From Octopus sinensis (taxonomy: Eukaryota), in assembly GCF_006345805.1 (NCBI RefSeq), contig NC_042999.1, positions 156,240,001 through 156,304,000 on the forward strand: 64,000 nucleotides of DNA, read 5' to 3'. A model generated the notes under the pieces. That model saw only the letters and a program-made list of their open reading frames with translations. It ran no database searches and was not told where the DNA came from. Positions 6,371-51,917 of the stretch are shown here, piece after piece (position 1 is the first letter of the stretch; every line of letters begins with the position of its first letter). The translations under genes and the position numbers were made by a program.

Positions 6371-6832
6371 TTCATCCGAATTCCACAAATCATTTTCTTT
6401 TTAAACTGGGTATGATGAAACTCTTCTGCAAGGGGAGACAATAATTCGTTTCTTTATTACCCACAAGGGGCTAAACATAGAGGGGACAAACAAGGACAGA
6501 CAAACGGATTAAGTCGATTACATCGACCCCAGTGCGTAACTGGTACTTAATTTATCGACCCCAAAAGGATGAAAGGCAAAGTCGACCTCAGAGGAATTTG
6601 AACTCTGAATGTGGCGGCAGACGAAATACGGTTACGCATTTCACCCGGCGTGCTAACGTTTCTGCCAGCTCGCCGCCCTCGGCAATAATCTCCCTGTCTC
6701 TCAAACAACAAACAACCCAATCATGTTTTAAGTGGAGAACTAGAAACAAAGGACTGCACGTGATCTTTCACATTGTAATACTACTGCTAATATGTGTTTC
6801 TATACTTAGTTGTTACATTCGGGCTGTTACAT

Positions 6833-9800
6833 ACCAGCCAAATTGACTACATCCTTACAAGGCAAAGGGAGAGATGGCTGCTTATAAATGCCAAAACCTT
6901 CCCAGGTGAAGAATGTACCCCACAACATAGACTGGTAGTTAGTGACTTTAGGATCAGGACTAGGAGGACAACCAGAAGACGACAAATATGGAGAAGAAGG
7001 ATCTGGAAGCTTAAAGATCCTGCAAATGGACAGAGATTTAGGGACATATTACTTGAAGCCTCTGACGAAGTAGAAGGGGATAGAGCATCACAGGGGGTAG
7101 AAGACAGCTGGACGTTTCTAAGGGACAACCTGCTGAGAGCCTCTGACCAGATCTGTGGCTGGTGCAAAGTCCCCTCTCGACCTAGAATAATGTGGTGGTG
7201 GAACAATATTGTAGACAGGGCTATTAGAGAAAAGAGACAGGCTTGGAAGGTCTGGAAAAATGGGGTAGCAGGGGATTGTATCAGACTGCCAAAAGAGAAG
7301 CTAGGAGACAGGTTTATTTAGCCAGAGGGGAAGCAGATAAGAAAAAATTTGCCAATGTTCTGCGCCGTGAGGACCAAAGACTGGAGGTGTTTCGTGTTGC
7401 AAGACAGTGTGTGAGAGAGAATCGTGATGTGGTAGGAGAGAAGTGTGTTCGCATGGAAGATGGTTCACTTGCGCTAAATGAGGATGCAAAGAGAGAGGTT
7501 TGGAGATGCCACTATGAAAGGTTGCTGAATGAAGAAAATGAATGGGATAAAGAGAGTCTGCCGAATGTTGACCCAACAGAGGGACCAGCTATCCAAGTTG
7601 ATAGTTCCGTGGTAGCTAAGGCAATTAGAAGCATGAAGACAGGGAAAGCCCCAGGCCCATCAGGAATCACTGCAGAGATGCTCAAAATGTCTGGTAGTGT
7701 CGGCTATAGCCTAGTCACCCGTATAGTTAATCAGGTGATACACAAAGGGGTCATACCCAATGACTGGTGTAGCAGTATAATAGTCAACTGCTACAAAGGT
7801 AAAGGTGATGCCCTAGATACAAATAACTACAGAGGTATCAAGCTGCTGGACCAGGTGATGAAGGTTACGGAGAGGGTCATAGCCCAACTAATTAGAGAGA
7901 GAGTTAGTTTAGATGAGATGCAGTTTGGGTTTGTGCCAGGGAAAAGTACTACTGATGCTATATTCCTGGTAAGGCAGCTGCAGGAGAAATACCTAGCCAA
8001 AGATAAGCCCCTGTACCTGGCTTTTGTTGACATGGAGAAAGCCTTCGACAGGGTCCCCCGATCCCTTATCTGGTGGGCAATGAGGAAACTAGGGATAGAT
8101 GAATGGTTAGTGAGAGCTGTGCGGGCCATGTACAGGGACGCCGCTAGTAGGGTGAGGGTTGGAAATGTGTACAGTGAAGAATTCCGGTAGAGGTAGGGGT
8201 CCACCAAGGCTCAGTACTCAGCCCCCTCCTATTTATCATAGTCCTCCAGGCAATAACGGAGGAATTCAAGACAGGATGCCCTTGGGAGCTCCTCTATGCT
8301 GATGACCTTGCTCTAATTGCTGAGTCGCTATCAGAACTGGAGGAGAAGTTTCAGGTGTGGAAACAAGGATTAGAATCGAAGGGCCTCAGAGTCAATCTAG
8401 CTAAAACCAAAGTCGTAATCAGTAGGAAGGTAGACAAATCACAAACACCTTCAGGTAGATGGCCCTGCTCGATCTGTAGAAAAGGTGTAAGTAGAAACTC
8501 TATAAGATGCACCAAGTGTAAGCTATGGACACATAAGAGATGCAGCAATGTCAAAGGAAGGCTAACTAGGAAGATGGTTTTTGTATGTGGCAGATGCTCA
8601 GGAACAATAAACACTGAAAATGCTCTGAGACCAACTTCCGTCACTTTCCAGGGAGAAAAACTAGAAATAGTTGATAGTTTCCGTTACCTAGGTGACCAAG
8701 TCAGCAGCGGGGGCGGGTGTGCTGAAAGTGTAACTGCTAGAGTAAGAATAGCTTGGGCAAAGTTCAGAGAGCTCTTACCTCTGCTGGTGACAAAAGGCCT
8801 CTCGCACAGAGTGAAAGGCAGACTGTATGATGCGTGTGTACGAACAGCCATGCTACATGGCAGTGAAACATGGGCCGTGACTGCTGAGGATATGCGTAAG
8901 CTCGCTAGAAATGAAGCCAGTATGCTCCGATGGATGTGTAATGCCGGTACTCACACTCGGCAGAGTGTAAGTACCTTGAGAGAAAAGCTGGACCTAAGAA
9001 GCATCAGTTGTGGTGTGCAAGAGAGACGTTTGCGCTGGTATGGTCATGTGGCGAGAATGGATGAAGATAGTTGTGTGAAAAAGTGCCACACCCTAGCGGT
9101 TGAGGGAACCTGTGGAAGAGGCAGACCCAGGAAAACCTGGGACGAGGTGGTGAAGCACGACCTTCGAACTTTAGGTCTCACTGAGGAAATGACTAGAGAC
9201 CGAGACCTCTGGAAGTGTGCCGTGCGCGAGAAGACCCGGCAGGACAAGTGAGTCCATAACCCGTGGCCTTCTACATGGGATGGAGCCAGCCTACGTATGC
9301 ATACCTTCCCTTCTTGGGACACAAAACTCTACTTGTGAAGACGTGATGAGGCAAGTGAGGATCAGAATCGAAATCGATCAATGGAAATTGCGGATGTGCT
9401 ACCAGTGCCGGTGGCATGTCAAAACTCTGCTTGTGAAGACCCGTTGAGGCAAGTGACGATCAGAATCGAAATCGATCAATGGAAATCGATCAATGGAAAT
9501 TGCAGATGTGTTACCAGTGCCGGTGGCATGTAAGAGAACTTTCCGTTTCGCGACCGTTGCCAGCACCGCCCCGTTTCGTGTCCGTTGCCAGCCTCGCCTG
9601 GCCCTCGTGCCGGTGGCACATAAAAAGCACCATCCGTTCGTGGCCGTTTGCCAGCTCTGTCTGGCACCAGTGCGGGTGGCACGTAAAAAGCACCCACTAC
9701 ACTCACGGAGTGGTTGGCGTTAGGAAGGGCATCCAGCCGTAGAAACACTGCCAGATTTGACTGGGCCTGATGAAGCCTTCTGGCTTCACAGACCCCAGTA

Positions 9801-9862
9801 GAACCGTCCAACCCATGCTAGCATGGAAAACGGACGCTAAACGATGATGATGATGATGATGA
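6833..9862 (+). mobile_element. 5'-truncated RTE-clade LINE (end of APE endonuclease, RT, PHD-like finger, 3' UTR, (GAT)n tail), inactivated
   Basis: ORF pieces 6794-7321, 7243-8190 and 8355-9251. QIDYIL...QHRLVV (endonuclease end), QFGF.PG.STTDAIF, FVDMEKAFD, and LYADD at about 8293-8307. Frameshifts near 7270 and 8187. The 3' UTR contains two copies of the 98-bp unit and ends in (GAT)n. Confidence 0.95.
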
Positions 9863-13291: not shown

Positions 13292-13351
13292 AACACTGTA
13301 ACGGGTGCCTGGAACTCGGACAGATTTCACAACAATATCCACATTTGTCGT
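13292..13351 (-). CDS. IFT27: IFT27 coding exon 3, TTNVDIVVKSVRVPGTRYSV
   Basis: 60 nt, acceptor TGTAG, donor GTAAGT. Aligns with human [20 protein letters not shown]. Confidence 0.92.
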
Positions 13352-15600: not shown

Positions 15601-15676
15601 AACAGGACTAGAGATGAATCATTTCAACAGTCCATAACTTATACGTATATAGTGAGCAAACTATATGTGAGTATGT

Positions 15677-16128: not shown

Positions 16129-16159
<31 letters not shown>

Positions 16160-16387
16160 GTGTGTGTGTGTGTGTGTGTGTTCGTGTCACTGTTTTTGTT
16201 CCACCACCATTGCTTGACAATCGATGTTGGTGTGTCTACATCCCTGTAACTTAGCAGTTCAGCAAAAAGTGACTGACAGAATAAGTACTAAGCTTCCAAA
16301 AATAAGTTCTGGGGCCAATTTGTTCGACTAAAGGCATTGCTCCAGCATGGTTGCAGTCAAATGACTGAAACAAATAAAAGAGTAAAA

Positions 16388-16425
<38 letters not shown>

Positions 16426-16561
16426 TCATCATCATCATCGTCGTTTAGCGTCCGTTTTCCATGCTAGCATGGGTTGGACGGTTCTACTGGGGTCTGTGAA
16501 GCCAGAAGGCTTCATCAGGCCCAGTCAAATCTGGCAGTGTTTCTATGGCTGGATGCCCTTC
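15677..16561 (-). repeat. ~880-bp inverted copy of 31978-32872, inserted with a 10-bp TSD
   Basis: Reverse complement matches 31978-32872 almost base for base; the identical spurious ORF appears at 15661-16050(-) and 32504-32893(+). GTGAGTATGT direct repeat at 15667-15676 and 16562-16571. Confidence 0.92.
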
Positions 16562-17119
16562 GTGAGTATGTGCATGTGTGAGAATGAATTCAAATATGAA
16601 ATAGAAGAAGCACCAGTGTAATAAACATAGTCAAACATACACACACACATCATCATCATCATCATCTACTGTCCGTTTTCCATGCTAGCATGGGTTGGAT
16701 GGTTCAACCGGGGTCTGGGAAGCCAGGAGGCTGCACCAGTCTCCAGTTTGATCTGGCAGTGTTTCTACAGCTGGATGCCCTTCCTAATGCCAACCACTCT
16801 GAGAGTGTAGTGGGTGCTTTTTACATGCCACCGGCACAGGGGCCAGGCGAGGTTGGCAATGGCCATGATCGGTTGGTGCTTTATACATGCCACCGGCACA
16901 GAAGCCAGTCAAGGTGTCGCTGGCATCAGCCACTTTTGGATGGTGCTTTTTACATAATACCGGCACAGGTATCGCAACTACAATTTCCATTTGATTTTTT
17001 GATGTTGATGTACTTGACTCAATATGTCTCCTCAAGCACAGCAGTAATAGTAAAAATTGAAGTCAACAAGAAGGAGCAAGGTTGGACATTTATTCTTTAA
17101 TCACTACAATTGTTTCCAT

Positions 17120-17278
17120 GCGACGTAGTTCTCCAGGTGTACAGGTACTTGATTATGCAACCACTTCCATGCATCATGAGATTTATTTACATATCACTTG
17201 AGGAAACACAACTAGATCTCATAATGCAGTAGAACGGTTGCATAATCAAGTACCTGCATGCCTGGAGAATTATATTGC
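17120..17278. repeat. Imperfect inverted repeat (MITE-like hairpin)
   Basis: TTCTCCAGGTGTACAGGTACTTGATTATGCAACC pairs with GGTTGCATAATCAAGTACCTGCATGCCTGGAGAA; an inner ATGAGAT/ATCTCAT pair extends the stem. Confidence 0.75.
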
Positions 17279-17465
17279 TTGGAAACCATACTCCTTGTTG
17301 ACTCCAATTTTTTCAATTATCTATTCACACACGCCAAAAGCCCAAACACAAACATAAAAATACATATAACACTACTACTGGTTCGCACAGGGTAAATCTG
17401 AAGGTGGACAAGTTTTACACTGCACTATACTATGGTCTTAACACAATATACCATAACTATATATC

Positions 17466-20400
17466 GATCAGAATCGAAATCGATCAATGGAAATTGCAGA
17501 TGTGTTACCAGTGCCGGTGGCATGTCGAAACTCTACTTGTGAAGACTCGTTGAGGCAAGTGAGGATCAGAATCGAAATCGATCAATGGAAATTGCAGATG
17601 TGTTACCAGTGCCGGTGGCATGTCGAAACTCTACTTGTGAAGACCCGTTGAGGCAAGTGAGGATCAGAATCGAAATCGATCAATGGAATTTGTGGATGTG
17701 CTCCAGTGCCGGTGGCATGTCGAAACTCTACTTGTGAAGACCCGTTGAGGCAAGTGAGGATCAGAATCGAAATCGATCAATGGAATTTGTGGATGTGTTA
17801 CCAGTGCCGGTGGCATGTCGTAACTCTACTTGTGAAGACCCGTTGAGGCAAGTGAGGATCAGAATCGAAATCGATCAATGGAAATTGCAGATGTGTTACC
17901 AGTGCCGGTGGCATGTCGAAACTCTACTTGTGAAGACCCGTTGAGGCAAGTGAGGATCAGAATCGAAATCGATCAATGGAATTTGTGGATGTGTTACCAG
18001 TGCCGGTGGCATGTCGAAACTCTACTTGTGAAGACCCGTTGAGGCAAGTGAGGATCAGAATCGAAATCGATCAATGGAAATTGCAGATGTGTTACCAGTG
18101 CGGTGGCATGTCGAAACTCTACTTGTGAAGACCCGTTGAGGCAAGTGAGGATCAGAATCGAAATCGATCAATGGAATTTGTGGATGTGTTACCAGTGCCG
18201 GTGGCATGTCGAAACTCTACTTGTGAAGACCCGTTGAGGCAAGTGAGGATCAGAATCGAAATCGATCAATGGAATTTGTGGATGTGTTACCAGTGCCGGT
18301 GGCATGTCGAAACTCTACTTGTGAAGACCGTTGAGGCAAGTGAGGATCAGAATCGAAATCGATATGGAATTGTGATGTGTTACCAGTGCCGGGGCATGTC
18401 GAAACTCTACTTGTGAAGACCCGTTGAGGCAAGTGAGGATCAGAATCGAAATCGATCAATGGAATTTGTGGATGTGTTACCAGTGCCGGTGGCATGTCGA
18501 AACTCTACTTGTGAAGACCCGTTGAGGCAAGTGAGGATCAGAATCGAAATCGATCAATGGAAATTGCAGATGTGTTACCAGTGCCGGTGGCATGTCGAAA
18601 CTCTACTTGTGAAGACCCGTTGAGGCAAGTGAGGATCAGAATCGAAATCGATCAATGGAAATTGCAGATGTGTTACCAGTGCCGGTGGCATGTCGAAACT
18701 CTACTTGTGAAGACCCGTTGAGGCAAGTGAGGATCAGAATCGAAATCGATCAATGGAATTTGTGGATGTGTACCAGTGCCGGTGGCATGTCGAAACTCTA
18801 CTTGTGAAGACCCGTTGAGGCAAGTGAGGATCAGAATCGAAATCGATCAATGGAAATTGCAGATGTGTTACCAGTGCCGGTGGCATGTCGAAACTCTACT
18901 TGTGAAGACCCGTTGAGGCAAGTGAGGATCAGATCGAAATCGATCAATGGAATTTGTGGATGTGTTACCAGTGCCGGTGGCATGTCGAAACTCTACTTGT
19001 GAAGACCCGTTGAGGCAAGTGAGGATCAGAATCGAAATCGATCAATGGAAATTGCAGATGGTTACCAGTGCCGGTGGCATGTCGAAACTCTACTTGTGAA
19101 GACCCGTGAGGCAAGTGAGGATCAGAATCGAAATCGATCAATGGAAATTGCAGATGTGTACCAGTGCTGGTGGCATGTCGAAACTCTACTTGTGAAGACC
19201 CGTTGAGGCAAGTGAGGATCAGAATCGAAATCGATCAATGGAATTTGTGGATGTGTTACCAGTGCCGGTGGCATGTCGAAACTCTACTTGTGAAGACCCG
19301 TTGAGGCAAGTGAGGATCAGAATCGAAATCGATCAATGGAATTTGTGGATGTGTTACCAGTGCCGGTGGCATGTCGAAACTCTACTTGTGAAGACCCGTT
19401 GAGGCAAGTGAGGATCAGAATCGAAATCGATCAATGGAATTTGTGGATGTGTTACCAGTGCCGGTGGCATGTCGAAACTCTACTTGTGAAGACCCGTTGA
19501 GGCAAGTGAGGATCAGAATCGAAATCGATGAATGGAAATTGCAGATGTGTTACCAGTGCCGGTGGCATGTCGAAACTCTACTTGTGAAGACCCGTTGAGG
19601 CAAGTGAGGATCAGAATCGAAATCGATCAATGGAATTTGTGGATGTGTTACCAGTGCCGGTGGCATGTCGAAACTCTACTTGTGAAGACCCGTTGAGGCA
19701 AGTGAGGATCAGAATCGAAATCGATCAATGGAAATTGCAGATGTGTTACCAGTGCCGGTGGCATGTCGAAACTCTACTTGTGAAGACCGTTGAGGCAAGT
19801 GAGGATCAGAATCGAAATCGATCAATGGAATTTGTGGATGTGTTACCAGTGCCGGTGGCATGTCGAAACTCTACTTGTGAAGACCCGTTGAGGCAAGTGA
19901 GGATCAGAATCGAAATCGATCAATGGAAATTGCAGATGTGTTACCAGTGCCGGTGGCATGTCGAAACTCTACTTGTGAAGACCCGTTGAGGCAAGTGAGG
20001 ATCAGAATCGAAATCGATCAATGGAATTTGTGGATGTGTTACCAGTGCCGGTGGTGGCATGTCGAAACTCTACTTGTGAAGACCCGTTGAGGCAAGTGAG
20101 GATCAGAATCGAAATCGATCAATGGAAATTGCAGATGTGTTACCAGTGCCGGTGGCATGTCGAAACTCTACTTGTGAAGACCCGTTGAGGCAAGTGAGGA
20201 TCAGAATCGAAATCGATCAATGGAATTTGTGGATGTGTTACCAGTGCCGGTGGCATGTCGAAACTCTACTTGTGAAGACCCGTTGAGGCAAGTGAGGATC
20301 AGAATCGAAATCGATCAATGGAAATTGCAGATGTGTTACCAGTGCCGGTGGCATGTCGAAACTCTACTTGTGAAGACCCGTTGAGGCAAGTGAGGATCAG

Positions 20401-23400
20401 AATCGAAATCGATCAATGGAAATTGCAGATGTGTTACCAGTGCCGGTGGCATGTCGAAACTCTACTTGTGAAGACCCGTTGAGGCAAGTGAGGATCAGAA
20501 TCGAAATCGATCAATGGAATTTGTGGATGTGTTACCAGTGCCGGTGGCATGTCGAAACTCTACTTGTGAAGACCCGTTGAGGCAAGTGAGGATCAGAATC
20601 GAAATCGATCAATGGAAATTGCAGATGTGTACCAGTGCCGGTGGCATGTCGAAACTCTACTTGTGAAGACCCGTTGAGGCAAGTGAGGATCAGAATCGAA
20701 ATCGATCAATGGAATTTGTGGATGTGTTACCAGTGCCGGTGGCATGTCGAAACTCTACTTGTGAAGACCCGTTGAGGCAAGTGAGGATCAGAATCGAAAT
20801 CGATCAATGGAATTTGTGGATGTGTTACCAGTGCCGGTGGCATGTCGAAACTCTACTTGTGAAGACCCGTTGAGGCAAGTGAGGATCAGAATCGAAATCG
20901 ATCAATGGAATTTGTGGATGTGTTACCAGTGCCGGTGGCATGTCGAAACTCTACTTGTGAAGACCCGTTGAGGCAAGTGAGGATCAGAATCGAAATCGAT
21001 CAATGGAAATTGCAGATGTGTTACCAGTGCCGGTGGCATGTCGAAACTCTACTTGTGAAGACCCGTTGAGGCAAGTGAGGATCAGAATCGAAATCGATCA
21101 ATGGAATTTGTGGATGTGTTACCAGTGCCGGTGGCATGTCGAAACTCTACTTGTGAAGACCCGTTGAGGCAAGTGAGGATCAGAATCGAAATCGATCAAT
21201 GGAATTTGTGGATGTGTTACCAGTGCCGGTGGCATGTCGAAACTCTACTTGTGAAGACCCGTTGAGGCAAGTGAGGATCAGAATCGAAATCGATCAATGG
21301 AATTTGTGGATGTTTTTACCAGTGCCGGTGGCATGTCGAAACTCTACTTGTGAAGACCCGTTGAGGCAAGTGAGGATCAGAATCGAAATCGATCAATGGA
21401 ATTTGTGGATGTGTTACCAGTGCCGGTGGCATGTCGAAACTCTACTTGTGAAGACCCGTTGAGGCAAGTGAGGATCAGAATCGAAATCGATCAATGGAAA
21501 TTGCAGATGTGTTACCAGTGCCGGTGGCATGTCGAAACTCTACTTGTGAAGACCCATTGAGGCAAGTGAGGATCAGAATCGAAATCGATCAATGGAATTT
21601 GTGGATGTGTTACCAGTGCCGGTGGCATGTCGAAACTCTACTTGTGAAGACCCGTTGAGGCAAGTGAGGATCAGAATCGAAATCGATCAATGGAATTTGT
21701 GGATGTGTTACCAGTGCCGGTGGCATGTCGAAACTCTACTTGTGAAGACCCGTTGAGGCAAGTGAGGATCAGAATCGAAATCGATCAATGGAATTTGTGG
21801 ATGTGTTACCAGTGCCGGGTGCATGTCGAAACTCTACTTGTGAAGACCCGTTGAGGCAAGTGAGGATCAGAATCGAAATCGATCAATGGAATTTGTGGAT
21901 GTGTTACCAGTGCCGGTGGCATGTCGAAACTCTACTTGTGAAGACCCGTTGAGGCAAGTGAGGATCAGAATCGAAATCGATCAATGGAATTTGTGGATGT
22001 GTTACCAGTGCCGGTGGCATGTCGAAACTCTACTTGTGAAGACCCGTTGAGGCAAGTGAGGATCAGAATCGAAATCGATCAATGGAAATTGCAGATGTGT
22101 TACCAGTGCCGGTGGCATGTCGAAACTCTACTTGTGAAGACCCGTTGAGGCAAGTGAGGATCAGAATCGAAATCGATCAATGGAATTTGTGGATGTGTTA
22201 CCAGTGCCGGTGGCATGTCGAAACTCTACTTGTGAAGACCCGTTGAGGCAAGTGAGGATCAGAATCGAAATCGATCAATGGAAATTGCAGATGTGTTACC
22301 AGTGCCGGTGGCATGTCGAAACTCTACTGTGAAGACCCGTTGAGGCAAGTGAGGATCAGAATCGAAATCGATCAATGGAATTTGTGGATGTGTTACCAGT
22401 GCCGGTGGCATGTCGAAACTCTACTTGTGAAGACCCGTTGAGGCAAGTAAGTGAGGATCAGAATCGAAATCGATCAATGGAAATTGCAGATGTGTTACCA
22501 GTGCCGGTGGCATGTCGAACCTCTACTTGTGAAGACCCGTTGAGGCAAGTGAGGATCAGAATCGAAATCGATCAATGGAATTTGTGGATGTGTTACCAGT
22601 GCCGGTGGCATGTCGAAACTCTACTTGTGAAGACCCGTTGAGGCAAGTGAGGATCAGAATCGAAATCGATCAATGGAAATTGCAGATGTGTTACCAGTGC
22701 CGGTGGCATGTCGAAACTCTACTTGTGAAGACCCGTTGAGGCAAGTGAGGATCAGAATCGAAATCGATCAATGGAATTTGTGGATGTGTTACCAGTGCCG
22801 GTGGCATGTCGAAACTCTACTTGTGAAGACCCGTTGAGGCAAGTGAGGATCAGAATCGAAATCGATCAATGGAAATTGCAGATGTGTTACCAGTGCCGGT
22901 GGCATGTCGAACTCTACTTGTGAAGACCCGTTGAGGCAAGTGAGGATCAGAATCGAAATCGATCAATGGAAATTGCAGATGTGTTACCAGTGCCGGTGGC
23001 ATGTCGAAACTCTATTGTGAAGACCCGTTGAGGCAAGTGAGGATCAGAATCGAAATCGATCAATGGAATTTGTGGATGTGTTACCAGTGCCGGTGGCATG
23101 TCGAAACTCTACTTGTGAAGACCCGTTGAGGCAAGTGAGGATCAGAATCGAAATCGATCAATGGAAATTGCAGATGTGTTACCAGTGCCGGTGGCATGTC
23201 GAAACTCTACTTGTGAAGACCCGTTGAGGCAAGTGAGGATGAGAATCGAAATCGATCAATGGAATTTGTGGATGTGTTACCAGTGCCGGTGGCATGTCGA
23301 AACTCTACTTGTGAAGACCCGTTGAGGCAAGTGAGGATCAGAATCGAAATCGATCAATGGAATTTGTGGATGTGTTACCAGTGCCGGTGGCATGTCGAAA

Positions 23401-26400
23401 TTCTACTTGTGAAGACCCGTTGAGGCAAGTGAGGATCAGAATCGAAATCGATCAATGGAAATTGCAGATGTGTTACCAGTGCCGGTGGCATGTCGCGAAA
23501 CTCTACTTGTGAAGACCCGTTGAGGCAAGTGAGGATCAGAATCGAAATCGATCAATGGAATTTGTGGATGTGTTACCAGTGCCGGTGGCATGTCGAAACT
23601 CTACTTGTGAAGACCCGTTGAGGCAAGTGAGGATCAGAATCGAAATCGATCAATGGAATGTGGATGTGTTACCAGTGCCGGTGGCATGTCGAAACTCTAC
23701 TTGTGAAGACCCGTTGAGGCAAGTGAGGATCAGAATCGAAATCGATCAATGGAATTTGTGGATGTGTTACCAGTGCCGGTGGCATGTCGAAACTCTACTT
23801 GTGAAGACCCGTTGAGGCAAGTGAGGATCAGAATCGAAATCGATCAATGGAATTTGTGGATGTGTACCAGTGCCGGTGGCATGTCGAAACTCTACTTGTG
23901 AAGACCCGTTGAGGCAAGTGAGGATCAGAATCGAAATCGATCAATGGAATTTGTGGATGTGTTACCAGTGCCGGTGGCATGTCGAAACTCTACTTGTGAA
24001 GACCCGTTGAGGCAAGTGAGGATCAGAATCGAAATCGATCAATGGAAATTGCAGATGTGTTACCAGTGCCGGTGGCATGTCGAAACTCTACTTGTGAAGA
24101 CCCGTTGAGGCAAGTGAGGATCAGAATCGAAATCGATCAATGGAATTTGTGGATGTGTTACCAGTGCCGGTGGCATGTCGAAACTCTACTTGTGAAGACC
24201 CGTTGAGGCAAGTGAGGATCAGAATCGAAATCGATCAATGGAAATTGCAGATGTGTTACCAGTGCCGGTGGCATGTCGAAACTCTACTTGTGAAGACCCG
24301 TTGAGGCAAGTGAGGATCAGAATCGAAATCGATCAATGGAATTTGTGGATGTGTTACCAGTGCCGGTGGCATGTCGAAACTCTACTTGTGAAGACCCGTT
24401 GAGGCAAGTGAGGATCAGAATCGAAATCGATCAATGGAATTGTGGATGTGTTACCAGTGCCGGTGGCATGTCGAAACTCTACTTGTGAAGACCCGTTGAG
24501 GCAAGTGAGGATCAGAATCGAAATCGATCAATGGAAATTGCAGATGTGTTACCAGTGCCGGTGGCATGTCGAAACTCTACTTGTGAAGACCCGTGAGGCA
24601 AGTGAGGATCAGAATCGAAATCGATCAATGGAACTTGTGGAGTGTTACCAGTGCCGGTGGCATGTCGAAACTCTACTTGTGAAGACCCTTTGAGGCAAGT
24701 GAGGATCAGAATCGAAATCGATCAATGGAATTGTGGATATGTTACCAGTGCCGGTGGCATGTCGAAACTCTACTTGTGAAGACCCGTTGAGGCAAGTGAG
24801 GATCAGAATCGAAATCGATCAATGGAATTTGTGGATGTGTTACCAGTGCCGGTGGCATGTCGAAACTCTACTTGTGAAGACCCGTTGAGGCAAGTGAGGA
24901 TCAGAATCGAAATCGATCAATGGAATTTGTGGATGTGTTACCAGTGCCGGTGGCATGTCGAAACTCTACTTGTGAAGACCCGTTGAGGCAAGTGAGGATC
25001 AGAATCGAAATCGATCAATGGAAATTGCAGATGTGTTACCAGTGCCGGTGGCATGTCGAAACTCTACTTGTGAAGACCCGTTGAGGCAAGTGAGGATCAG
25101 AATCGAAATCGATCAATGGAATTTGTGGATGTGTTACCAGTGCCGGTGGCATGTCGAAACTCTACTTGTGAAGACCCGTTGAGGCAAGTGAGGATCAGAA
25201 TCGAAATCGATCAATGGAAATTGCAGATGTGTTACCAGTGCGGTGGCATGTCGAAACTCTACTTGTGAAGACCCGTTGAGGCAAGTGAGGATCAGAATCG
25301 AAATCGATCAATGGAATTTGTGGATGTGTTACCAGTGCCGGTGGTATGTCGAAACTCTACTTGTGAAGACCCGTTGAGGCAAGTGAGGATCAGAATCGAA
25401 ATCGATCAATGGAAATTGCAGATGTGTTACCAGTGCCGGTGGCATGTCGAAACTCTACTTGTGAAGACCCGTTGAGGCAAGTGAGGATCAGAATCGAAAT
25501 CGATCAATGGAAATTGCAGATGTGTTACCAGTGCCGGTGGCATGTCGAAACTCTACTTGTGAAGACCCGTTGAGGCAAGTGAGGATCAGAATCGAAATCG
25601 ATCAATGGAATTGTGGATGTGTTACCAGTGCCGGTGGCATGTCGAAACTCTACTTGTGAAGACCGTTGAGGCAAGTGAGGATCAGAATCGAAATCGATCA
25701 ATGGAAATTGCAGATGTGTTACCAGTGCCGGTGGCATGTCGAAACTCTACTTGTGAAGACCCGTTGAGGCAAGTGAGGATCAGAATCGAAATCGATCAAT
25801 GGAAATTGCAGATGTGTTACCAGTGCCGGTGGCATGTCGAAACTCTACTTGTGAAGACCGTTGAGGCAAGTGAGGATCAGAATCGAAATCGATCAATGGA
25901 ATTTGTGGATGTGTTACCAGTGCCGGTGGCATGTCGAAACTCTACTTGTGAAGACCCGTTGAGGCAAGTGAGGATCAGAATCGAAATCGATCAATGGAAT
26001 TTGTGGATGTGTTACCAGTGCGGTGGCATGTCGAAACTCTACTTGTGAAGACCCGTTGAGGCAAGTGAGGATCAGAATCGAAATCGATCAATGGAATTTG
26101 TGGATGTGTTACCAGTGCCGGTGGCATGTCGAAACTCTACTTGTGAAGACCCGTTGAGGCAAGTGAGGATCAGAATCGAAATCGATCAATGGAATTTGTG
26201 GATGTGTTACCAGTGCCGGTGGCATGTCGAAACTCTACTTGTGAAGACCCGTTGAGGCAAGTGAGGATCAGAATCGAAATCGATCAATGGAATTTGTGGA
26301 TGTGTTACCAGTGCCGGTGGCATGTCGAAACTCTACTTGTGAAGACCCGTTGAGGCAAGTGAGGATCAGAATCGAAATCGATCAATGGAATTTGTGGATG

Positions 26401-29400
26401 TGTTACCAGTGCCGGTGGCATGTCGAAACTCTACTTGTGAAGACCCGTTGAGGCAAGTGAGGATCAGAATCGAAATCGATCAATGGAATTTGTGGATGTG
26501 TACCAGTGCCGGTGGCATGTCGAAACTCTACTTGTGAAGACCCGTTGAGGCAAGTGAGGATCAGAATCGAAATCGATCAATGGAATTTGTGGATGTGTTA
26601 CCAGTGCCGGTGGCATGTCGAAACTCTACTTGTGAAGACCCGTTGAGGCAAGTGAGGATCAGAATCGAAATCGATCAATGGAAATTGCAGATGTGTTACC
26701 AGTGCCGGTGGCATGTCGAAACTCTACTTGTGAAGACCCGTTGAGGCAAGTGAGGATCAGAATCGAAATCGATCAATGGAATTTGTGGATGTGTTACCAG
26801 TGCCGGTGGCATGTCGAAAACTCTACTTGTGAAGACCCGTTGAGGCAAGTGAGGATCAGAATCGAAATCGATCAATGGAAATTGCAGATGTGTTACCAGT
26901 GCCGGTGGCATGTCGAAACTCTACTTGTGAAGACCCGTTGAGGCAAGTGAGGATCAGAATCGAAATCGATCAATGGAATTTGTGGATGTGTTACCAGTGC
27001 CGGTGGCATGTCGAAACTCTACTTGTGAAGACCCGTTGAGGCAAGTGAGGATCAGAATCGAAATCGATCAATGGAAATTGCAGATGTGTTACAGTGCCGG
27101 TGGCATGTCGAACCTCTACTTGTGAAGACCCGTTGAGGCAAGTGAGGATCAGAATCGAAATCGATCAATGGAATTTGTGGATGTGTTACCAGTGCCGGTG
27201 GCATGTCGAAATCTACTTGTGAAGACCCGTTGAGGCAAGTGAGGATCAGAATCGAAATCGATCAATGGAAATTGCAGATGTGTTACCAGTGCCGGTGGCA
27301 TGTCGAAACTCTACTTGTGAAGACCCGTTGAGGCAAGTGAGGATCAGAATCGAAATCGATCAATGGAATTTGTGGATGTGTTACCAGTGCCGGTGGCATG
27401 TCGAAACTCTACTTGTGAAGACCCGTTGAGGCAAGTGAGGATCAGAATCGAAATCGATCAATGGAAATTGCAGATGTGTTACCAGTGCGGGTGGCATGTC
27501 GAAACTCTACTTGTGAAGACCCGTGAGGCAAGTGAGGATCAGAATCGAAATCGATCAATGGAAATTGCAGATGTGTTACCAGTGCCGGTGGCATGTCGAA
27601 ACTCTACTTGTGAAGACCCGTTGAGGCAAGTGAGGATCAGAATCGAAATCGATCAATGGAATTTGTGGATGTGTTACCAGTGCCGGTGGCATGTCGAACT
27701 CTCTACTGTGAAAACCCGTTGAGGCAAGTGAGGATCAGAATCGAAATCGATCAATGGAAATTGCAGATGTGTTACCAGTGCCGGTGGCATGTCGAAACTC
27801 TACTTGTGAAGACCCGTTGAGGCAAGTGAGGATGAGAATCGAAATCGATCAATGGAATTGTGGATGTGTTACCAGTGCCGGTGGCATGTCGAAACTCTAC
27901 TTGTGAAGACCCGTTGAGGCAAGTGAGGATCAGAATCGAAATCGATCAATGGAATTGTGGATGTGTTACCAGTGCCGGTGGCATGTCGAAATTCTACTTG
28001 TGAAGACCCGTTGAGGCAAGTGAGGATCAGAATCGAAATCGATCAATGGAAATTGCAGATGTGTTACCAGTGCCGGTGGCATGTCGAAACTCTACTTGTG
28101 AAGACCGTTGAGGCAAGTGAGGAGTGAGGATCAGATCGAAATCGATCAATGGAATTTGTGGATGTGTTACCAGTGCCGGTGGCATGTCGAAACTCTACTT
28201 GTGAAGACCCGTTGAGGCAAGTGAGGATCAGAATCGAAATCGATCAATGGAATTGTGGATGTGTTACCAGTGCCGGTGGCATGTCGAAACTCTACTTGTG
28301 AAGACCCGTTGAGGCAAGTGAGGATCAGAATCGAAATCGATCAATGGAATTTGTGGATGTGTTACCAGTGCCGGTGGCATGTCGAAACTCTACTGTGAAG
28401 ACCGTTGAGGCAAGTGAGGATCAGAATCGAAATCGATCAATGGAATTTGTGGATGTGTTACCAGTGCCGGTGGCATGTCGAAAACTCTACTGTGAAGACC
28501 CGTTGAGGCAAGTGAGGATCAGAATCGAAATCGATCAATGGAATTGTGGATGTGTACCAGTGCCGGTGTGGCATGTCGAACTCTTAGTGAAGACCCGTTG
28601 AGGCAAGTGAGGATCAGAATCGAAATCGATCAATGGAAATTGCAGATGTGTTACCAGTGCCGGTGGCATGTCGAAACTCTACTTGTGAAGACCCGTTGAG
28701 GCAAGTGAGGATCAGAATCGAAATCGATCAATGGAATTTGTGGATGTGTACCAGTGCGGTGGCATGTCGAAACTCTACTGTGAAGACCCGTTGAGGCAAG
28801 TGAGGATCAGAATCGAAATCGATCAATGGAAATTGCAGATGTGTTACCAGTGCCGGTGGCATGTCGAAACTCTTACTTGTGAAGACCCGTTGAGGCAAGT
28901 GAGGATCAGAATCGAAATCGATCAATGGAATTTGTGGATGTGTTACCAGTGCGGTGGCATGTCGAAACTCTACTTGTGAAGACCCGTTGAGGCAAGTGAG
29001 GATCAGAATCGAAATCGATCAATGGAATTTGTGGATGTGTTACCAGTGCCGGTGGCATGTCGAAACTCTACTTGTGAAGACCGTTGAGGCAAGTGAGGAT
29101 CAGAATCGAAATCGATCAATGGAAATTGCAGATGTGTTACCAGTGCCGGTGGCATGTCGAAACTCTACTTGTGAAGACCCGTTGAGGCAAGTGAGGATCA
29201 GAATCGAAATCGATCAATGGAACTTGTGGATGTGTTACCAGTGCCGGGCGGCATGTCGAAACTCTACTTGTGAAGACCCTTTGAGGCAAGTGAGGATCAG
29301 AATCGAAATCGATCAATGGAATTTGTGGATATGTTACCAGTGCCGGTGGCATGTCGAAACTCTACTTGTGAAGACCCGTTGAGGCAAGTGAGGATCAGAA

Positions 29401-31810
29401 TCGAAATCGATCAATGGAATTTGTGGATGTGTTACCAGTGCCGGTGGCATGTCGAAACTCTACTGTGAAGACCCGTTGAGGCAAGTGAGGATCAGAATCG
29501 AAATCGATCAATGGAATTTGTGGATGTGTTACCAGTGCCGGTGGCATGTCGAAACTCTACTTGTGAAGACCCGTTGAGGCAAGTGAGGATCAGAATCGAA
29601 ATCGATCAATGGAAATGCAGATGTGTTACCAGTGCCGGTGGCATGTCGAAAACTCTACTTGTGAAGACCCGTTGAGGCAAGTGAGGATCAGAATCGAAAC
29701 GATCAATGGAAATGCAGATGTGTTACCAGTGCCGGTGGCATGTCGAAACTCTACTTGTGAGACCCGTTGAGGCAAGTGAGGATCAGAATCGAAATCGATC
29801 AATGGAATTTGTGGATGTGTTACCAGTGCCGGTGGCATGTCGAAACTCTACTTGTGAAGACCCGTTGAGGCAAGTGAGGATCAGAATCGAAATCGATCAA
29901 TGGAAATTGCAGATGTGTTACCAGTGCCGGTGGCCATGTCGAAACTCTACTTGTGAAGACCCGTTGAGGCAAGTGAGGATGAGAATCGAAATCGATCAAT
30001 GGAATTTGTGGATGTGTTACCAGTGCCGGTGGCATGTCGAAACTCTACTTGTGAAGACCCGTTGAGGCAAGTGAGGATCAGAATCGAAATCGATCAATGG
30101 AATTTGTGGATGTGTTACCAGTGCCGGTGGCATGTCGAAATTCTACTTGTGAAGACCCGTTGAGGCAAGTGAGGATCAGAATCGAAATCGATCAATGGAA
30201 ATTGCAGATGTGTTACCAGTGCCGGTGGCATGTCGAAACTCTACTTGTGAAGACCCGTTGAGGCAAGTGAGGATCAGAATCGAAATCGATCAATGGAATT
30301 TGTGGATGTGTTACCAGTGCCGGTGGCATGTCGAAACTCTACTTGTGAAGACCGTTGAGGCAAGTGAGGATCAGAATCGAAATCGATCAATGGAATTTGT
30401 GGATGTGTTACCAGTGCCGGTGGCATGTCGAAACTCTACTTGTGAAGACCCGTTGAGGCAAGTGAGGATCAGAATCGAAATCGATCAATGGAATTTGTGG
30501 ATGTGTTACCAGTGCCGGTGGCATGTCGAAACTCTACTTGTGAAGACCCGTTGAGGCAAGTGAGGATCAGAATCGAAATCGATCAATGGAATTTGTGGAT
30601 GTGTTACCAGTGCCGGTGGCATGTCGAAACTCTACTTGTGAAGACCCGTTGAGGCAAGTGAGGATCAGAATCGAAATCGATCAATGGAATTTGTGGATGT
30701 GTTACCAGTGCGGTGGCATGTCGAAACTCTACTTGTGAAGACCCGTTGAGGCAAGTGAGGATCAGAATCGAAATCGATCAATGGAAATTGCAGATGTGTT
30801 ACCAGTGCCGGTGGCATGTCGAAACTCTACTTGTGAAGACCCGTTGAGGCAAGTGAGGATCAGAATCGAAATCGATCAATGGAATTTGTGGATGTGTTAC
30901 CAGTGCCGGTGGCATGTCGAAACTCTACTTGTGAAGACCCGTTGAGGCAAGTGAGGATCAGAATCGAAATCGATCAATGGAAATTGCAAGATGTGTTACC
31001 AGTGCCGGTGGCATGTCGAAACTCTACTTGTGAAGAAGACCGTTGAGGCAAGTGAGGATCAGAATCGAAATCGATCAATGGAATTTGTGGATGTGTTACC
31101 AGTGCCGGTGGCATGTCGAAACTCTACTTGTGAAGACCCGTTGAGGCAAGTGAGGATCAGAATCGAAATCGATCAATGGAATTGTGGATGTGTTACCAGT
31201 GCCGGTGGCATGTCGAAACTCTACTTGTGAAGACCCGTTGAGGCAAGTGAGGATCAGAATCGAAATCGATCAATGGAAATTGCAGATGTGTTACCAGTGC
31301 CGGTGGCATGTCGAAACTCTACTTGTGAAGACCCGTTGAGGCAAGTGAGGATCAGAATCGAAATCGATCAATGGAACTTGTGGATGTGTTACCAGTGCCG
31401 GTGGCATGTCGAAACTCTACTTGTGAAGACCCTTTGAGGCAAGTGAGGATCAGAATCGAAATCGATCAATGAATTTGTGGATATGTTACCAGTGCCGGTG
31501 GCATGTCGAAAACTCTATTGTGAAGACCGTTGAGGCAAGTGAGGATCAGAATCGAAATCGATCAATGGAATTGTGGATGTGTACCAGTGCCGGTGGCAGT
31601 CGAAACTCTACTTGTGAAGACCCGTTGAGGCAAGTGAGGATCAGAATCGAAATCGATCAATGGAATTTGTGGATGTGTTACCAGTGCCGGTGGCATGTCG
31701 AAACTCTACTTGTGAAGACCCGTTGAGGCAAGTGAGGATCAGAATCGAAATCGATCAATGGAAATTGCAGATGTGTTACCAGTGCCGGTGTTACCAGTGC
31801 CGGTGGCATG
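17466..31810 (+). repeat. 98-bp tandem satellite, about 146 units, derived from the RTE LINE 3' UTR
   Basis: Unit GATCAGAATCGAAATCGATCAATGGAA(A/T)TTG(CA/TG)GATGTGTTACCAGTGCCGGTGGCATGTCGAAACTCTACTTGTGAAGACCCGTTGAGGCAAGTGAG, with starts at 17466, 17564 and onward. The same unit is present twice in the LINE copies at 9325-9530 and 51083-51290. Confidence 0.98.
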
Positions 31811-32115
31811 TAAGAGAACTTTCCGTTTCGCGACCGTTGCCAGCCTCGCCTGGCCCTCGTGCCGGTGGCACATAAAAAGCACCATCCGTTCGTGGCCGTT
31901 TGCCAGCTCTGTCTGGCACAAGTGCGGGTGGCACGTATAAAAAGCACCCACTACACTCACGGAGTGGTTGGCGTTAGGAAGGGCATCCAGCCGTAGAAAC
32001 ACTGCCAGATTGACTGGGCCTGATGAAGCCTTCTGGCTTCACAGACCCCAGTAGAACCGTCCAACCATGCTAGCATGGAAAACGGACGCTAAACGACGAT
32101 GATGATGATGATGAT
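31811..32115 (+). mobile_element. RTE LINE 3' terminus continuing directly from the satellite
   Basis: TAAGAGAACTTTCCGTTTCGCGACC...GGACGCTAAACGACGATGATG, near-identical to 9531-9862. Confidence 0.95.
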
Positions 32116-32116
32116 A

Positions 32117-32167
<51 letters not shown>

Positions 32168-40666: not shown

Positions 40667-40746
40667 CATATTATAATTTTTTGACAAATTTGTGCCGTCA
40701 TTATGAAACGTTTGGCAAAGTGAAGTTTTTCCAATTGCTGAACTAC
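40667..40746 (-). CDS. IFT27: IFT27 coding exon 2, (G)SSAIGKTSLCQTFHNDGTNLSKNYNM (P-loop)
   Basis: 80 nt, acceptor TTTTACAG, donor GTTTGT. GxxxxGKT P-loop; aligns with human [27 protein letters not shown]. Confidence 0.92.
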
Positions 40747-44364: not shown

Positions 44365-44401
44365 CAAGAAGAAAGCATTTAGCGTGGAGAACCGTCGTCA
44401 T
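44365..44401 (-). CDS. IFT27: IFT27 (RABL4) coding exon 1, MTTVLHAKCFLL(G)
   Basis: ATG at 44401-44399, 37 nt, followed by a GTAAGT donor. Resembles the vertebrate IFT27 N-terminus (MVKLAAKCILAG). Phase matches exon 2. Confidence 0.85.
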
Positions 44402-50704: not shown

Positions 50705-51683
50705 CATCATCATCATCATCATCATCGTTTAGCGTCCGTTTTCCATGCTAGCATGGGTTGGACGGTTCTACTGGGGTCTGTGAAGCCAGAAGGCTTCATC
50801 AGGCCCAGTCAAATCTGGCAGTGTTTCTACGGCTGGATGCCCTTCCTAACGCCAACCACTCCGTGAGTGTAGTGGGTGCTTTTTACGTGCCACCCGCACA
50901 GGTGCCAGACAGAGCTGGCAAACGGCCATGAACGGATGGTGCTTTTTATGTGCCACCGGCACGAGGGCCAGGCGAGGCTGGCAACGGACACGAACGGATG
51001 GTGCTTTTTACGTGCCATCGGCACGAGGCCAGTTGGGGCGGTGCTGGCAACGGTCGTGAAACGGAAGGTTCTCTTACATGCCACCGGCACTGGTAACACA
51101 TCTGCAATTTCCATTGATCGATTTCCATTGATTGATTTCGATTCTGATCCTCACTTGCCTCAGCGGGTCTTCACAAGTAGAGTTTCGACATGCCACCGGC
51201 ACTGGTAACACATCTGCAATTTCCATTGATCGATTTCGATTCTGATCCTCACTTGCCTCAACAGGTCTTCACAAGTAGAGTTTTGTGTCCCAAGAAGGGA
51301 AGGTATGCATACGTAGGCTGGCTCCATCCCATGTAGAAGGCCACGGGTTATGGACTCACTTGTCGTGCCGGGTCTTCTCGCGCACAGCACACTTCCAGAG
51401 GTCTCGGTCTCTAGTCATTTCCTCAGTGAGACCTAAAGTTCGAAGGTCGTGCTTCACCACCTCGTCCCAGGTTTTCCTGGGTCTGCCTCTTCCGCAGGTT
51501 CCCTCAACAGCTAGGGTGTGGCACTTTTTCACACAACTATCTTCATCCATTCTCGCCACATGACCATACCAGTGCAAACGTCTCTCTTGCACACCACAAC
51601 TGATGCTTCTTAGGTCCAGCTTTTCTCTCAAGGTACTTACACTCTGCCGAGTATAAGTACTGACATTACACATCCATCGGAGC
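50705..51683 (-). mobile_element. Young 5'-truncated RTE LINE copy with a 6-bp TSD
   Basis: ORF 51356-51685 near-identical to the end of 8355-9251. Complete 3' UTR with two 98-bp units and a (GAT)n tail. TSD ATTGGT at 50699-50704 and 51684-51689. Confidence 0.93.
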
Positions 51684-51917
51684 ATTGGTATATATATATA
51701 TATATATATATAAAACTATAAAATTTTACTGGATAAAATTTTTTTGCCAGCTTATTTTGTCTCTGTCTACTCTCCTAGTGCTATATGAACATTTAATGTG
51801 GCTTTAGGGTCAGGTTTTGACTGCTATTTCAGCGTGGTGGTATCTCTCAGATACCCTAATTTATAATTTTAAATAATTTTTACCTTTGTAAGGCTTTTAT
51901 TCCTATGCTGGCTACCT

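What the first reader, a model, noticed from the sequence alone, without database searches (positions are those of the whole stretch)
17466..32115. Birth of a satellite from a LINE 3' UTR: a two-unit repeat expanded to about 146 units inside IFT27 intron 2
Seen: both ordinary RTE copies in the window (6833-9862 and 50705-51683) carry the 98-bp unit twice in the 3' UTR. Here the unit is repeated for 14.3 kb and then runs without a break into the normal LINE 3' end and (GAT)n tail, so the array is a single 5'-truncated LINE whose UTR repeat expanded. The units are very homogeneous, so the expansion is recent. It accounts for about one third of the IFT27 gene span and would be transcribed antisense within the pre-mRNA. 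Established: satellites can arise from transposon parts. Inference: this RTE family may seed such arrays genome-wide, either after insertion or by reiterative template jumping during reverse transcription.
Basis: partly seen in the sequence, partly recalled or inferred. Interest (0 to 1): 0.75.

Follow-up and report, generated by a model that had tools for sequence, protein, structure and literature searches.

The report
LINE-tail repeat expanded in octopus intron
A 476-bp LINE fragment in an intron of the octopus IFT27 gene has about 1.5 copies of a 98-bp repeat in Octopus vulgaris but about 147 copies (14.3 kb) in the Octopus sinensis assembly, which makes it a well-dated example of the already known way tandem arrays grow out of transposon parts.

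Summary
Window 17466-31790 is a 98-bp tandem array of 146.6 units. It runs directly into the normal 3' UTR and (GAT)6 tail of an RTE-like LINE (to 32115). It lies antisense in intron 2 of IFT27, and the window is Octopus sinensis assembly GCA_006345805.1.

Orthologous loci settle the history. O. bimaculoides has an empty site. O. vulgaris has the same insertion, with identical junctions and private indels, but only 1.55 units. So a 476-bp 5'-truncated LINE inserted between about 34 and 2.5 Mya, and the array grew about 95-fold afterwards in the O. sinensis lineage. Template jumping at insertion is rejected.

The array has two unit types. A matches the ancestral second unit. B is the ancestral first unit plus a CpG>TpG change that O. 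vulgaris lacks. Multi-kb internal block duplications point to unequal exchange.

Older LINE subfamilies carry the unit once, so it is native UTR and not a captured satellite.

Caveats: there is only one long-read assembly, it has homopolymer indel noise, and the unit count is soft. Genome-wide seeding could not be tested.

This is a clean new instance of a known kind of event (satellites from Ogre, L1, CR1 and HeT-A 3' UTRs).

The parts
17466..31790 (+). 98-bp tandem array of 146.6 units. There are 53 type A units, 92 type B units and 2 unclassifiable units. The first unit starts exactly at the 5' truncation point of the LINE fragment.
   Evidence: TRF; unit chopping and typing; probe counts.
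21571..25094 (+). Block of units 42-77. It is the source or copy of an internal block duplication with units 89-124 (26168-29685).
   Evidence: The A/B string is identical over 36 units at an offset of 47 units, while the longest run in 500 shuffles was 22. There are 7 mismatches in 3.5 kb against 60-80 at control offsets.
26168..29685 (+). Block of units 89-124, the duplicate of units 42-77. Its sub-block 101-121 recurs as units 123-143 (29490-31543).
   Evidence: Pairs of private variants recur at units 59/60, 106/107 and 128/129, and at units 73/74, 120/121 and 142/143.
31773..31805 (+). 15-bp duplication (GTGTTACCAGTGCCG, 2.2 copies) at the boundary between array and UTR. It is a private mark of this insertion and is shared with the O. 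vulgaris orthologue.
   Evidence: TRF; sequence.
31806..32097 (+). Non-array part of the LINE 3' UTR. It contains 63-bp repeats with a hairpin-like GTGCC-GGT-GGCAC motif and lacks 29 bp relative to the copy at 9300-9862.
   Evidence: It differs by 0.6% in substitutions from the O. vulgaris orthologue.
32098..32115 (+). (GAT)6 tail, the 3' end of the LINE.
   Evidence: The same tail type occurs in both other copies, in O. vulgaris and in the relative L005.
32116..32164 (.). (AT)n target microsatellite on the 3' side. The 5' flank ends in ...ACTATATAT(C) at 17465. Any target-site duplication is ambiguous inside the microsatellite.
   Evidence: The O. bimaculoides empty site joins the two flanks through (AT)5-6.
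40667..40746 (-). IFT27 exon 2 (P-loop), upstream of intron 2.
   Evidence: Pfam Ras family E=1.7e-33.
13292..13351 (-). IFT27 exon 3, downstream of intron 2.
44365..44401 (-). IFT27 exon 1 (encodes MTTVLHAKCFLL followed by the first base of a Gly codon).
6813..9862 (+). Ordinary copy of the same LINE subfamily, with 2.0 units in the 3' UTR and a 5-bp target-site duplication (ACTTA). It is specific to O. sinensis.
   Evidence: The empty site in O. vulgaris is shown.
50705..51690 (-). Second ordinary, 5'-truncated copy with 2.0 units. It is shared with O. vulgaris (L002 1779-2757).

Best explanation
What it is. A roughly 476-bp 5'-truncated copy of an RTE-like LINE inserted, antisense, into an (AT)n tract in intron 2 of IFT27. 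The insertion happened in the common ancestor of O. vulgaris and O. sinensis, after the split from O. bimaculoides. It carried one full and one partial copy of a 98-bp repeat that this LINE subfamily normally has twice in its 3' UTR.

What happened next. In the O. sinensis lineage, unit 1 first acquired a CpG>TpG change. The two units then amplified at the DNA level to about 147 copies (14.3 kb). The most likely process is repeated unequal sister-chromatid or homologue exchange and replication slippage. The latest steps duplicated blocks of about 22 and 47 units.

What is shown and what is inferred. The insertion history and the order of events are shown by sequence comparison. The recombinational mechanism is inferred from the internal pattern of the array.

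Function. Nothing indicates a function. The array is most likely a neutral intronic expansion that IFT27 splicing tolerates.
For: (1) Empty site in O. bimaculoides. The two flanks are contiguous through (AT)5-6, there is no assembly gap at that point, and no unit occurs anywhere in the 41-kb locus.

(2) Same insertion in O. vulgaris. It has the same 5' junction 'ACCATAACTATATAT|CGATCAGAATCG', the same 15-bp duplication before GGTGGCATGTAAGAG, the same 29-bp UTR deletion and the same (GAT)n-(AT)n end. It has only 1.55 units, in a gap-free assembly.

(3) Divergence between the two species is 0.6% in the element tail and 0.5-1.4% in the flanks. The published split is about 2.5 Mya, and about 34 Mya for O. 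bimaculoides (PMC10700109).

(4) Unit 1 in O. vulgaris reads GGAATTTGCGG and unit 2 reads GGAAATTGCAG. In O. sinensis, B is GGAATTTGTGG (the same site with CpG>TpG) and A equals unit 2. No GCGG unit remains and no A/B recombinants occur. So both ancestral units were amplified, and the B units only after a mutation that O. vulgaris lacks.

(5) Block duplications share their substitutions, with 3-7 mismatches per 2-3.5 kb against 60-80 at control offsets over 3.5 kb. They do not share their indels.

(6) Unit-number series of 1, then 2.0, then 1.55/146.6 across subfamilies and species.

(7) No (GAT)n tail or target-site duplication lies between units.

(8) The strand read in the IFT27 pre-mRNA has no AATAAA, no GTRAG donor and no polypyrimidine-AG acceptor.
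Against: - Only one O. sinensis assembly exists here. L003 is the same assembly as the window, so neither array length nor the block duplications are independently confirmed.
- Indel noise is high and uneven, at 14-18 per kb in units 100-119. The duplicated blocks lie in that part, so some of the length could be a layout error.
- Unequal exchange is inferred from pattern only. The first unit in O. sinensis is type A, whereas in O. vulgaris it is B-like, which requires extra exchange or conversion steps.
- Contraction of an ancestral long array in O. vulgaris is unparsimonious but not strictly excluded.
Confidence: 0.82

Rival explanations
1. The array was made during retrotransposition. The reverse transcriptase repeatedly jumped back on the two-unit template, or the source RNA already carried a long array, so the element was long from the moment it inserted.
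For: The array starts exactly at the 5' end of the insertion and continues unbroken into the UTR. The 3' UTR of this LINE group is generally prone to repeats: the 63-bp repeats vary from 1.9 to 2.5 copies among copies, and L005 has a 52-bp repeat of 2.8 copies.
Against: The same insertion event in O. vulgaris has only 1.55 units. All 92 B units carry a TpG that is CpG in O. vulgaris and in the ordinary copy. Multi-unit blocks with shared private variants are duplicated, which unit-by-unit template jumps would not produce.
Confidence: 0.03
2. Assembly artefact. The O. sinensis locus really has few units, or far fewer than 147, and the long-read assembler inflated or mis-joined the array.
For: There is a single assembly. 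Homopolymer indel noise is up to 18 per kb inside the array. The block duplications at offsets of 47 and 22 units lie in the noisiest part. The published statistics for this assembly are comparatively poor, with 13,516 scaffolds (PMC10700109).
Against: Assemblers usually collapse tandem arrays and do not create them. The flank runs into A-A-B-B-A..., which a two-unit locus cannot give. 92 units carry a variant (GTGG) found in no other LINE copy sampled, so many such units must exist in the reads. The homology available for a false join with a foreign array is at most about 150 bp. Substitution variants are structured and are not random noise.
Confidence: 0.1
3. The long array is ancestral to O. 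vulgaris and O. sinensis, and O. vulgaris collapsed it back to about 1.5 units by unequal exchange or deletion.
For: Unequal exchange contracts arrays as readily as it expands them. Copy numbers of other TE-derived arrays in this gene differ in both directions between the species.
Against: The O. vulgaris state equals the canonical structure of ordinary copies, minus the 5' truncation, and includes the ancestral CpG in unit 1. The O. sinensis units are 99.8% identical, which argues for amplification well within the 0.5-1.4% species divergence.
Confidence: 0.04
4. Rolling-circle amplification of an excised circle of units, followed by reintegration at the same site.
For: Very high homogeneity and a large, fast increase in copy number.
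Against: The array has no global periodicity. Identity at the 47-unit offset holds only for units 42-77 against 89-124 and not for units 0-41 against 47-88. The array is a patchwork of several different segmental duplications, at offsets of 22, 26, 47, 69 and 73 units.
Confidence: 0.03

Closest known systems
Satellites that arise from short tandem repeats in the 3' UTR of Ogre/Tat LTR retrotransposons (Macas et al. 2009; Vondrak et al. 2020, PMC7004042)
   Same: A short tandem repeat that is a normal part of a retroelement's 3' UTR expands at the DNA level into a long homogeneous array. Related species carry the element with its short precursor but lack the expanded array.
   Different: The parent here is a non-LTR (LINE) element in an animal. 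Only one expanded locus is known, it is intronic, and it has an exactly orthologous unexpanded allele in a sister species. In Lathyrus many arrays and several satellite families are involved.
LINE-derived satellites: the common cetacean satellite (L1 3' UTR), chicken HinfI/SCR1 (CR1 3' UTR plus part of ORF2) and Drosophila 18HT (HeT-A/TART 3' UTR), as listed in review PMC9659126, Table 1
   Same: The monomer derives from the 3' non-coding end of a LINE.
   Different: Those are old, abundant, multi-locus and often heterochromatic satellites whose birth can no longer be seen. This one is a single young array still attached to its parent fragment.
Double-insertion (tandem TE dimer) model of satellite origin (McGurk and Barbash 2018, PMC5932611)
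   Same: A TE sequence becomes the substrate for unequal exchange and array growth.
   Different: In that model the repeat unit is a whole or truncated element created by nested or tandem insertion. Here the unit is an internal 98-bp UTR repeat, and no tail or target-site duplication lies between units.
Octopus RTE-2_OV, a brain-expressed RTE LINE (Petrosino et al. 2022, PMC9115989)
   Same: An RTE-type LINE of Octopus with recent activity and a repeat-rich 3' UTR.
   Different: [quoted passage not shown] The element here has a PHD finger inside the RT region and a roughly 600-bp UTR with 98-bp and 63-bp repeats. I could not show that the two are the same element.

Membership tests
TE-derived tandem array formed by expansion of an internal TE repeat | The monomer is homologous to an internal region of a transposable element. 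| tested here: met
   The unit matches the 3' UTR of two ordinary LINE copies in the window and of copies in O. vulgaris.
TE-derived tandem array formed by expansion of an internal TE repeat | A short precursor array is present in ordinary copies of the element. | tested here: met
   Ordinary copies have 2.0 units and older subfamily copies have 1 unit.
TE-derived tandem array formed by expansion of an internal TE repeat | The expanded array is still contiguous with the rest of the element, and expansion came after insertion. | tested here: met
   The array runs into the UTR and tail. The orthologous insertion has 1.55 units in O. vulgaris, and O. bimaculoides has the empty site.
Satellite DNA in the strict sense | Many long arrays or high genomic abundance, typically heterochromatic. 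| not testable with these tools
   No octopus genome could be searched by DNA. Only one array was seen in about 210 kb sampled. There were no protein-level hits for array frames and no metagenome hits.
RTE-clade LINE (the parent element) | Reverse transcriptase domain of non-LTR type. | tested here: met
   Pfam RVT_1 at E=9.4e-13 in the window copy and 5e-33 in the homologue P0013. The best PDB matches are the R2 and L1 ORF2p reverse transcriptases.
RTE-clade LINE (the parent element) | N-terminal apurinic/apyrimidinic-type endonuclease and a single ORF. | tested here: inconclusive
   The copies at hand are 5'-truncated or frameshifted. The N-terminal ORFs gave no Pfam hit.
RTE-clade LINE (the parent element) | 3' end made of a short simple repeat instead of poly(A), with short target-site duplications. 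| tested here: met
   A (GAT)n tail occurs in all copies and in L005. The target-site duplication ACTTA is shown against the O. vulgaris empty site.
RTE-clade LINE (the parent element) | Placement of the RT within the RTE clade by phylogeny. | not tested
   The only support is a recalled resemblance of the C-terminal motif RLRWYGHVARM...GRGRPRKTW to BovB/RTE. The PHD finger between the RT palm and thumb is atypical.
Arrays made by reiterative template jumping at insertion | The array is present from the time of insertion, so it is shared by all descendants of that insertion. | tested here: not met
   The O. vulgaris orthologue has 1.55 units.
Tandem TE insertion (double-insertion) arrays | Units are bounded by element ends, tails or target-site duplications. 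| tested here: not met
   Units abut directly, with GTGAG followed by GATCAG. No (GAT)n lies inside the array.
IFT27/RABL4 (the host gene) | Rab-like small GTPase domain, no C-terminal prenylation cysteines, and orthology to annotated IFT27. | tested here: met
   Pfam Ras at E=1.7e-33. The C-terminus reads ...EHFSSLT. The protein is 98% identical to O. bimaculoides IFT27 and matches the core of O. sinensis XP_029633081 exactly. The PDB search alone cannot separate it from Rab8.

The most novel reading that the evidence does not exclude
The IFT27 array may not be a one-off. The repeat-prone 3' UTR of this young and still mobile RTE-like subfamily may seed 98-bp arrays at many loci in O. sinensis and its relatives, giving a satellite family in statu nascendi. 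Because the precursor state is preserved in a sister species, expansion rates could then be measured locus by locus. Each unit also carries the GTGCC-GGT-GGCA hairpin-like motif that is conserved in the tails of this LINE group and its SINE-like passengers. Sense transcripts of such arrays could therefore interact with the LINE's reverse transcriptase.
Probability: 0.15. Interest if true: 0.55.

Novelty: new member of a known kind. Interest (0 to 1): 0.36.

Why it matters
Origin of tandem arrays from transposon parts is well documented, but usually only the end product is visible. Here all three states are preserved in assembled genomes: the empty site, the 476-bp insertion with 1.55 units, and the 14.3-kb array. 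Together they bound a roughly 95-fold expansion to within about 2.5 million years.

The array keeps a readable internal record. It contains two ancestral unit types, a diagnostic CpG>TpG change and nested block duplications. That makes it a tidy test case for models of array growth and a natural locus for sizing across O. sinensis populations.

It also more than doubles an intron of a cilium gene, with no obvious splice or poly(A) signals. In practical terms, it shows that gene-span differences between the two octopus assemblies can come from such arrays.

Tried and rejected
- Higher-order repeat. The TRF period of 293 is just 3x98-1. The A/B string has no strict periodicity.
- Structure-driven slippage. 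A dimer folded as DNA is no more stable than shuffles, z=0.14.
- Finding other arrays through predicted proteins. The 147-aa array ORF has no word-sharing homologue among 5.8 billion proteins. This is a weak negative, because annotated eukaryotic proteomes mask repeats.
- Sampling many LINE copies through annotated ORFs. Only one octopus hit with genomic context, P0020, was available. It gave one older-subfamily copy with a single unit.
- Metagenome scan for the unit junction gave 0 hits.
I used cluster members instead.
- Linking the element to the published RTE-2_OV. The descriptions differ and no sequence was at hand.
- Assigning the LINE clade from solved structures. Only the generic RT core aligns, to R2 and L1.
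- R2/R4/Dong-type identity, suggested by the zinc finger after the RT. I did not pursue it. The finger is a PHD inserted between the RT palm and thumb, and the C-terminus looks RTE-like.

Full report
OBSERVATION

Tandem Repeats Finder reports a single array at window 17466-31790 with period 98, 146.6 copies, 96% matches and score 26555. A 44-nt probe across the unit junction matches 127 times, against 0 expected from shuffles. Outside the array it matches only in two ordinary LINE copies, at two junctions each.

I cut the array into 147 units. Three linked positions define two unit types. Type A is GGAAATTGCAGATG (53 units) and type B is GGAATTTGTGGATG (92 units); 2 units could not be classified. 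Apart from those sites there are only 33 private substitutions in 14.3 kb. There are also 87 deleted and 19 inserted bases.

The last unit, of type A, continues without a break into the normal 3' UTR (GGTGGCATGTAAGAGAAC...) and a (GAT)6 tail ending at 32115, followed by (AT)n. The two ordinary copies, at about 6813-9862(+) and about 50705-51690(-), carry 37+98+60 nt of the unit. That is 2.0 units.

HOST GENE

Rab-like exons lie on the minus strand. The exons are 44401-44365, 40746-40667, 13351-13292, 11910-11851, 6009-5892, 4065-3956 and 2454-2356. Spliced together they give a 564-nt CDS with GT-AG introns throughout.

The protein has a Ras-family domain (E=1.7e-33) and no prenylation cysteines. 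It is 98% identical to the annotated IFT27 of O. bimaculoides. It is identical to the core of O. sinensis XP_029633081.

The array lies in intron 2, which is 27,315 bp long, and is antisense to the gene. The element is 35% of the 42-kb CDS span. Locus L003, from O. sinensis GCA_006345805.1, has the identical array with the same TRF score. The window is therefore that assembly, and L003 is not an independent confirmation.

ORTHOLOGOUS LOCI

In O. bimaculoides (L001) the gene spans 20.9 kb. The two flanks of the element are contiguous there, through (AT)5-6, with no assembly gap at that point and no 98-bp unit anywhere in the locus. This is an empty site.

In O. vulgaris (L002) the assembly is gap-free and 97-99% identical to the window in the flanks. 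The same insertion is present, shown by four shared features:
- the same 5' junction, ACCATAACTATATAT|CGATCAGAATCG;
- the same 15-bp duplication GTGTTACCAGTGCCG just before the UTR;
- the same 29-bp UTR deletion;
- the same (GAT)n-(AT)n end.

It holds only one full unit and one 56-nt partial unit, so the whole element is 476 bp. Intron 2 is 11,084 bp in O. vulgaris and 8,306 bp in O. bimaculoides.

Between the two sister species the element tail differs by 0.6% and the flanks by 0.5-1.4%. The published divergence times are about 2.5 My for O. sinensis and O. vulgaris, and about 34 My for O. bimaculoides (PMC10700109). The insertion therefore dates to between those two splits. The expansion from 1.55 to about 147 units came after insertion, in the O. 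sinensis lineage.

ORDER OF EVENTS INSIDE THE ARRAY

In O. vulgaris, unit 1 reads GGAATTTGCGG and unit 2 reads GGAAATTGCAG. In O. sinensis, type A equals unit 2. Type B equals unit 1 with its CpG changed to TpG. No GCGG unit remains. Both ancestral units were therefore amplified, and the B units only after a substitution that O. vulgaris lacks.

The A/B string has no strict higher-order period. It does contain a 36-unit run that repeats at an offset of 47 units (units 42-77 and 89-124). The longest such run in 500 shuffles was 22. There are further repeats at offsets of 22 and 69 units.

At nucleotide level these blocks differ by 3-7 substitutions per 2-3.5 kb, against 60-80 at control offsets over 3.5 kb. 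Their indel differences are as frequent as in the controls. Pairs of private variants recur at units 59/60, 106/107 and 128/129, and at units 73/74, 120/121 and 142/143.

I read this as repeated unequal exchange that duplicated multi-kb blocks, overlaid by consensus noise. Deletions are about 10-fold enriched in homopolymers. Indel density varies from 1-6 per kb in units 20-99 to 14-18 per kb in units 100-119.

There is no global periodicity, which argues against a single rolling-circle template. No tails or target-site duplications lie between units, which argues against tandem insertion. The unit has no unusual fold (z=0.14).

ORIGIN OF THE UNIT

A related O. vulgaris copy that is 88% identical (L004) and an old O. 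bimaculoides copy carry the corresponding sequence once, as plain UTR. The series is therefore 1 unit, then 2 units in the young subfamily, then 147 at this locus. The unit is native LINE sequence and not a captured older satellite.

The terminal 280 bp or so of the UTR is shared with many short dispersed elements in all three species. A more distant relative, L005, also ends in a tandem-repeated GGTGGCACGTAAAA motif and a (GAT)7 tail. Repeat-prone 3' UTRs are therefore typical of this LINE group.

The subfamily was mobile recently. The copy at 6813-9862 is absent from O. vulgaris and has the target-site duplication ACTTA.

The RTE label is plausible but not proven. In its favour are the RT domain, the simple-repeat tail, the short target-site duplication and a C-terminal motif that I recall from BovB/RTE. 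No endonuclease domain was seen in the truncated copies, and a PHD finger sits inside the RT region.

EFFECT ON THE GENE

The strand of the array that is read in the IFT27 pre-mRNA has no AATAAA, no GTRAG donor and no polypyrimidine-AG acceptor. I infer a neutral intronic expansion. Expression was not testable.

ARTEFACT QUESTION

A wholly spurious array is unlikely, for three reasons:
- The flank leads into A-A-B-B-A..., which a two-unit locus cannot give.
- 92 units carry a variant seen in no other copy sampled.
- Assemblers tend to collapse arrays, and they rarely create them.

The exact unit number and the late block duplications rest on one noisy long-read assembly and need to be checked against reads.

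COMPARISON AND NOVELTY

Expansion of short tandem repeats in a retroelement's 3' UTR into satellites is established for plant Ogre elements (PMC7004042). LINE 3' UTR-derived satellites are listed for cetaceans, chicken and Drosophila (PMC9659126).

This is a new member of that known kind. Its value is that it preserves all three states (empty site, precursor and expanded array) with a date bound and an internal record of how it grew.

The genome-wide seeding idea remains untested. The array ORF has no database homologue, a metagenome scan found nothing, and no octopus genome could be searched by DNA.

Noticed in passing
window 6813-9862 (+); L002 about 28350-28356: The ordinary LINE copy is specific to O. 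sinensis. O. vulgaris has a clean empty site (TCTATACTTA|CAAGTAG), and the copy is flanked by a 5-bp target-site duplication, ACTTA. This subfamily therefore retrotransposed after the species split, about 2.5 My ago. Its ORF is split into three frames, possibly by homopolymer errors in the assembly.
   Followed up: partly
L002 28551-30540 versus window about 6605 (minus strand); window 4181-4990 versus L002 31981-32450: In the same gene, O. vulgaris has 10.9 tandem copies of a 184-bp SINE-like unit where O. sinensis has one. A 170-bp SINE-like array has 4.8 copies in O. sinensis and 2.8 in O. vulgaris. TE-derived tandem arrays change copy number quickly in both lineages.
   Followed up: partly
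window 9575-9694, 13740-13882, 31796-31948, 33929-34203, 40096-40265 and 50875-51032; many sites in L001, L002 and L004: 62-66-bp repeats containing a hairpin-like GTGCC-GGT-GGCAC...AAAAAGCACC motif occur in the LINE tail and in many short dispersed elements that share the last 280 bp or so of the LINE. These look like SINE-type passengers that use the same 3' end. The 98-bp unit contains a degenerate copy of the motif.
   Followed up: partly
window 8355-9251 (+); proteins P0013 and P0033: This LINE group has a PHD-type zinc finger inserted between the RT palm and the thumb-like region. Relatives with the same layout occur in cnidarians (Hydractinia, Montipora, Nematostella) and amphioxus. One member is mislabelled as a Salmonella protein, which is probably contamination.
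   Followed up: partly
window 17466-32115 generally: The O. sinensis assembly shows homopolymer deletions. There are 25 deletions in the 12 unit positions that lie in runs of 3, against 12 deletions in the 56 positions that lie in runs of 1. In the element tail, two single-base homopolymer deletions and one 2-bp (TA) insertion separate it from O. vulgaris. The two deletions are also absent from the other copies. Frameshifts in this assembly should be treated with caution.
   Followed up: yes
window 15688-16569 and 35924-36461; window about 13600-17390 versus L001: Intron 2 holds further lineage-specific DNA. Segments of 882 bp and 538 bp are present in O. sinensis but not in O. vulgaris. About 3.8 kb next to the array is present in both of these species but absent from O. 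bimaculoides. These were not characterised.
   Followed up: no
window 42371-42881; L002 11571-12081: A 257-bp direct repeat of 2.0 copies (92% matches) lies in IFT27 intron 1 and is shared by both species. Part of the unit looks tRNA/SINE-like.
   Followed up: no
window 11860-11910 (exon 4, minus strand): The octopus IFT27 G3 motif reads DTPSKD, where Rabs have DTAGQE. The Argonauta orthologue has the same motif. The glycine and the catalytic glutamine are both missing, which suggests an atypical or very slow GTPase.
   Followed up: no
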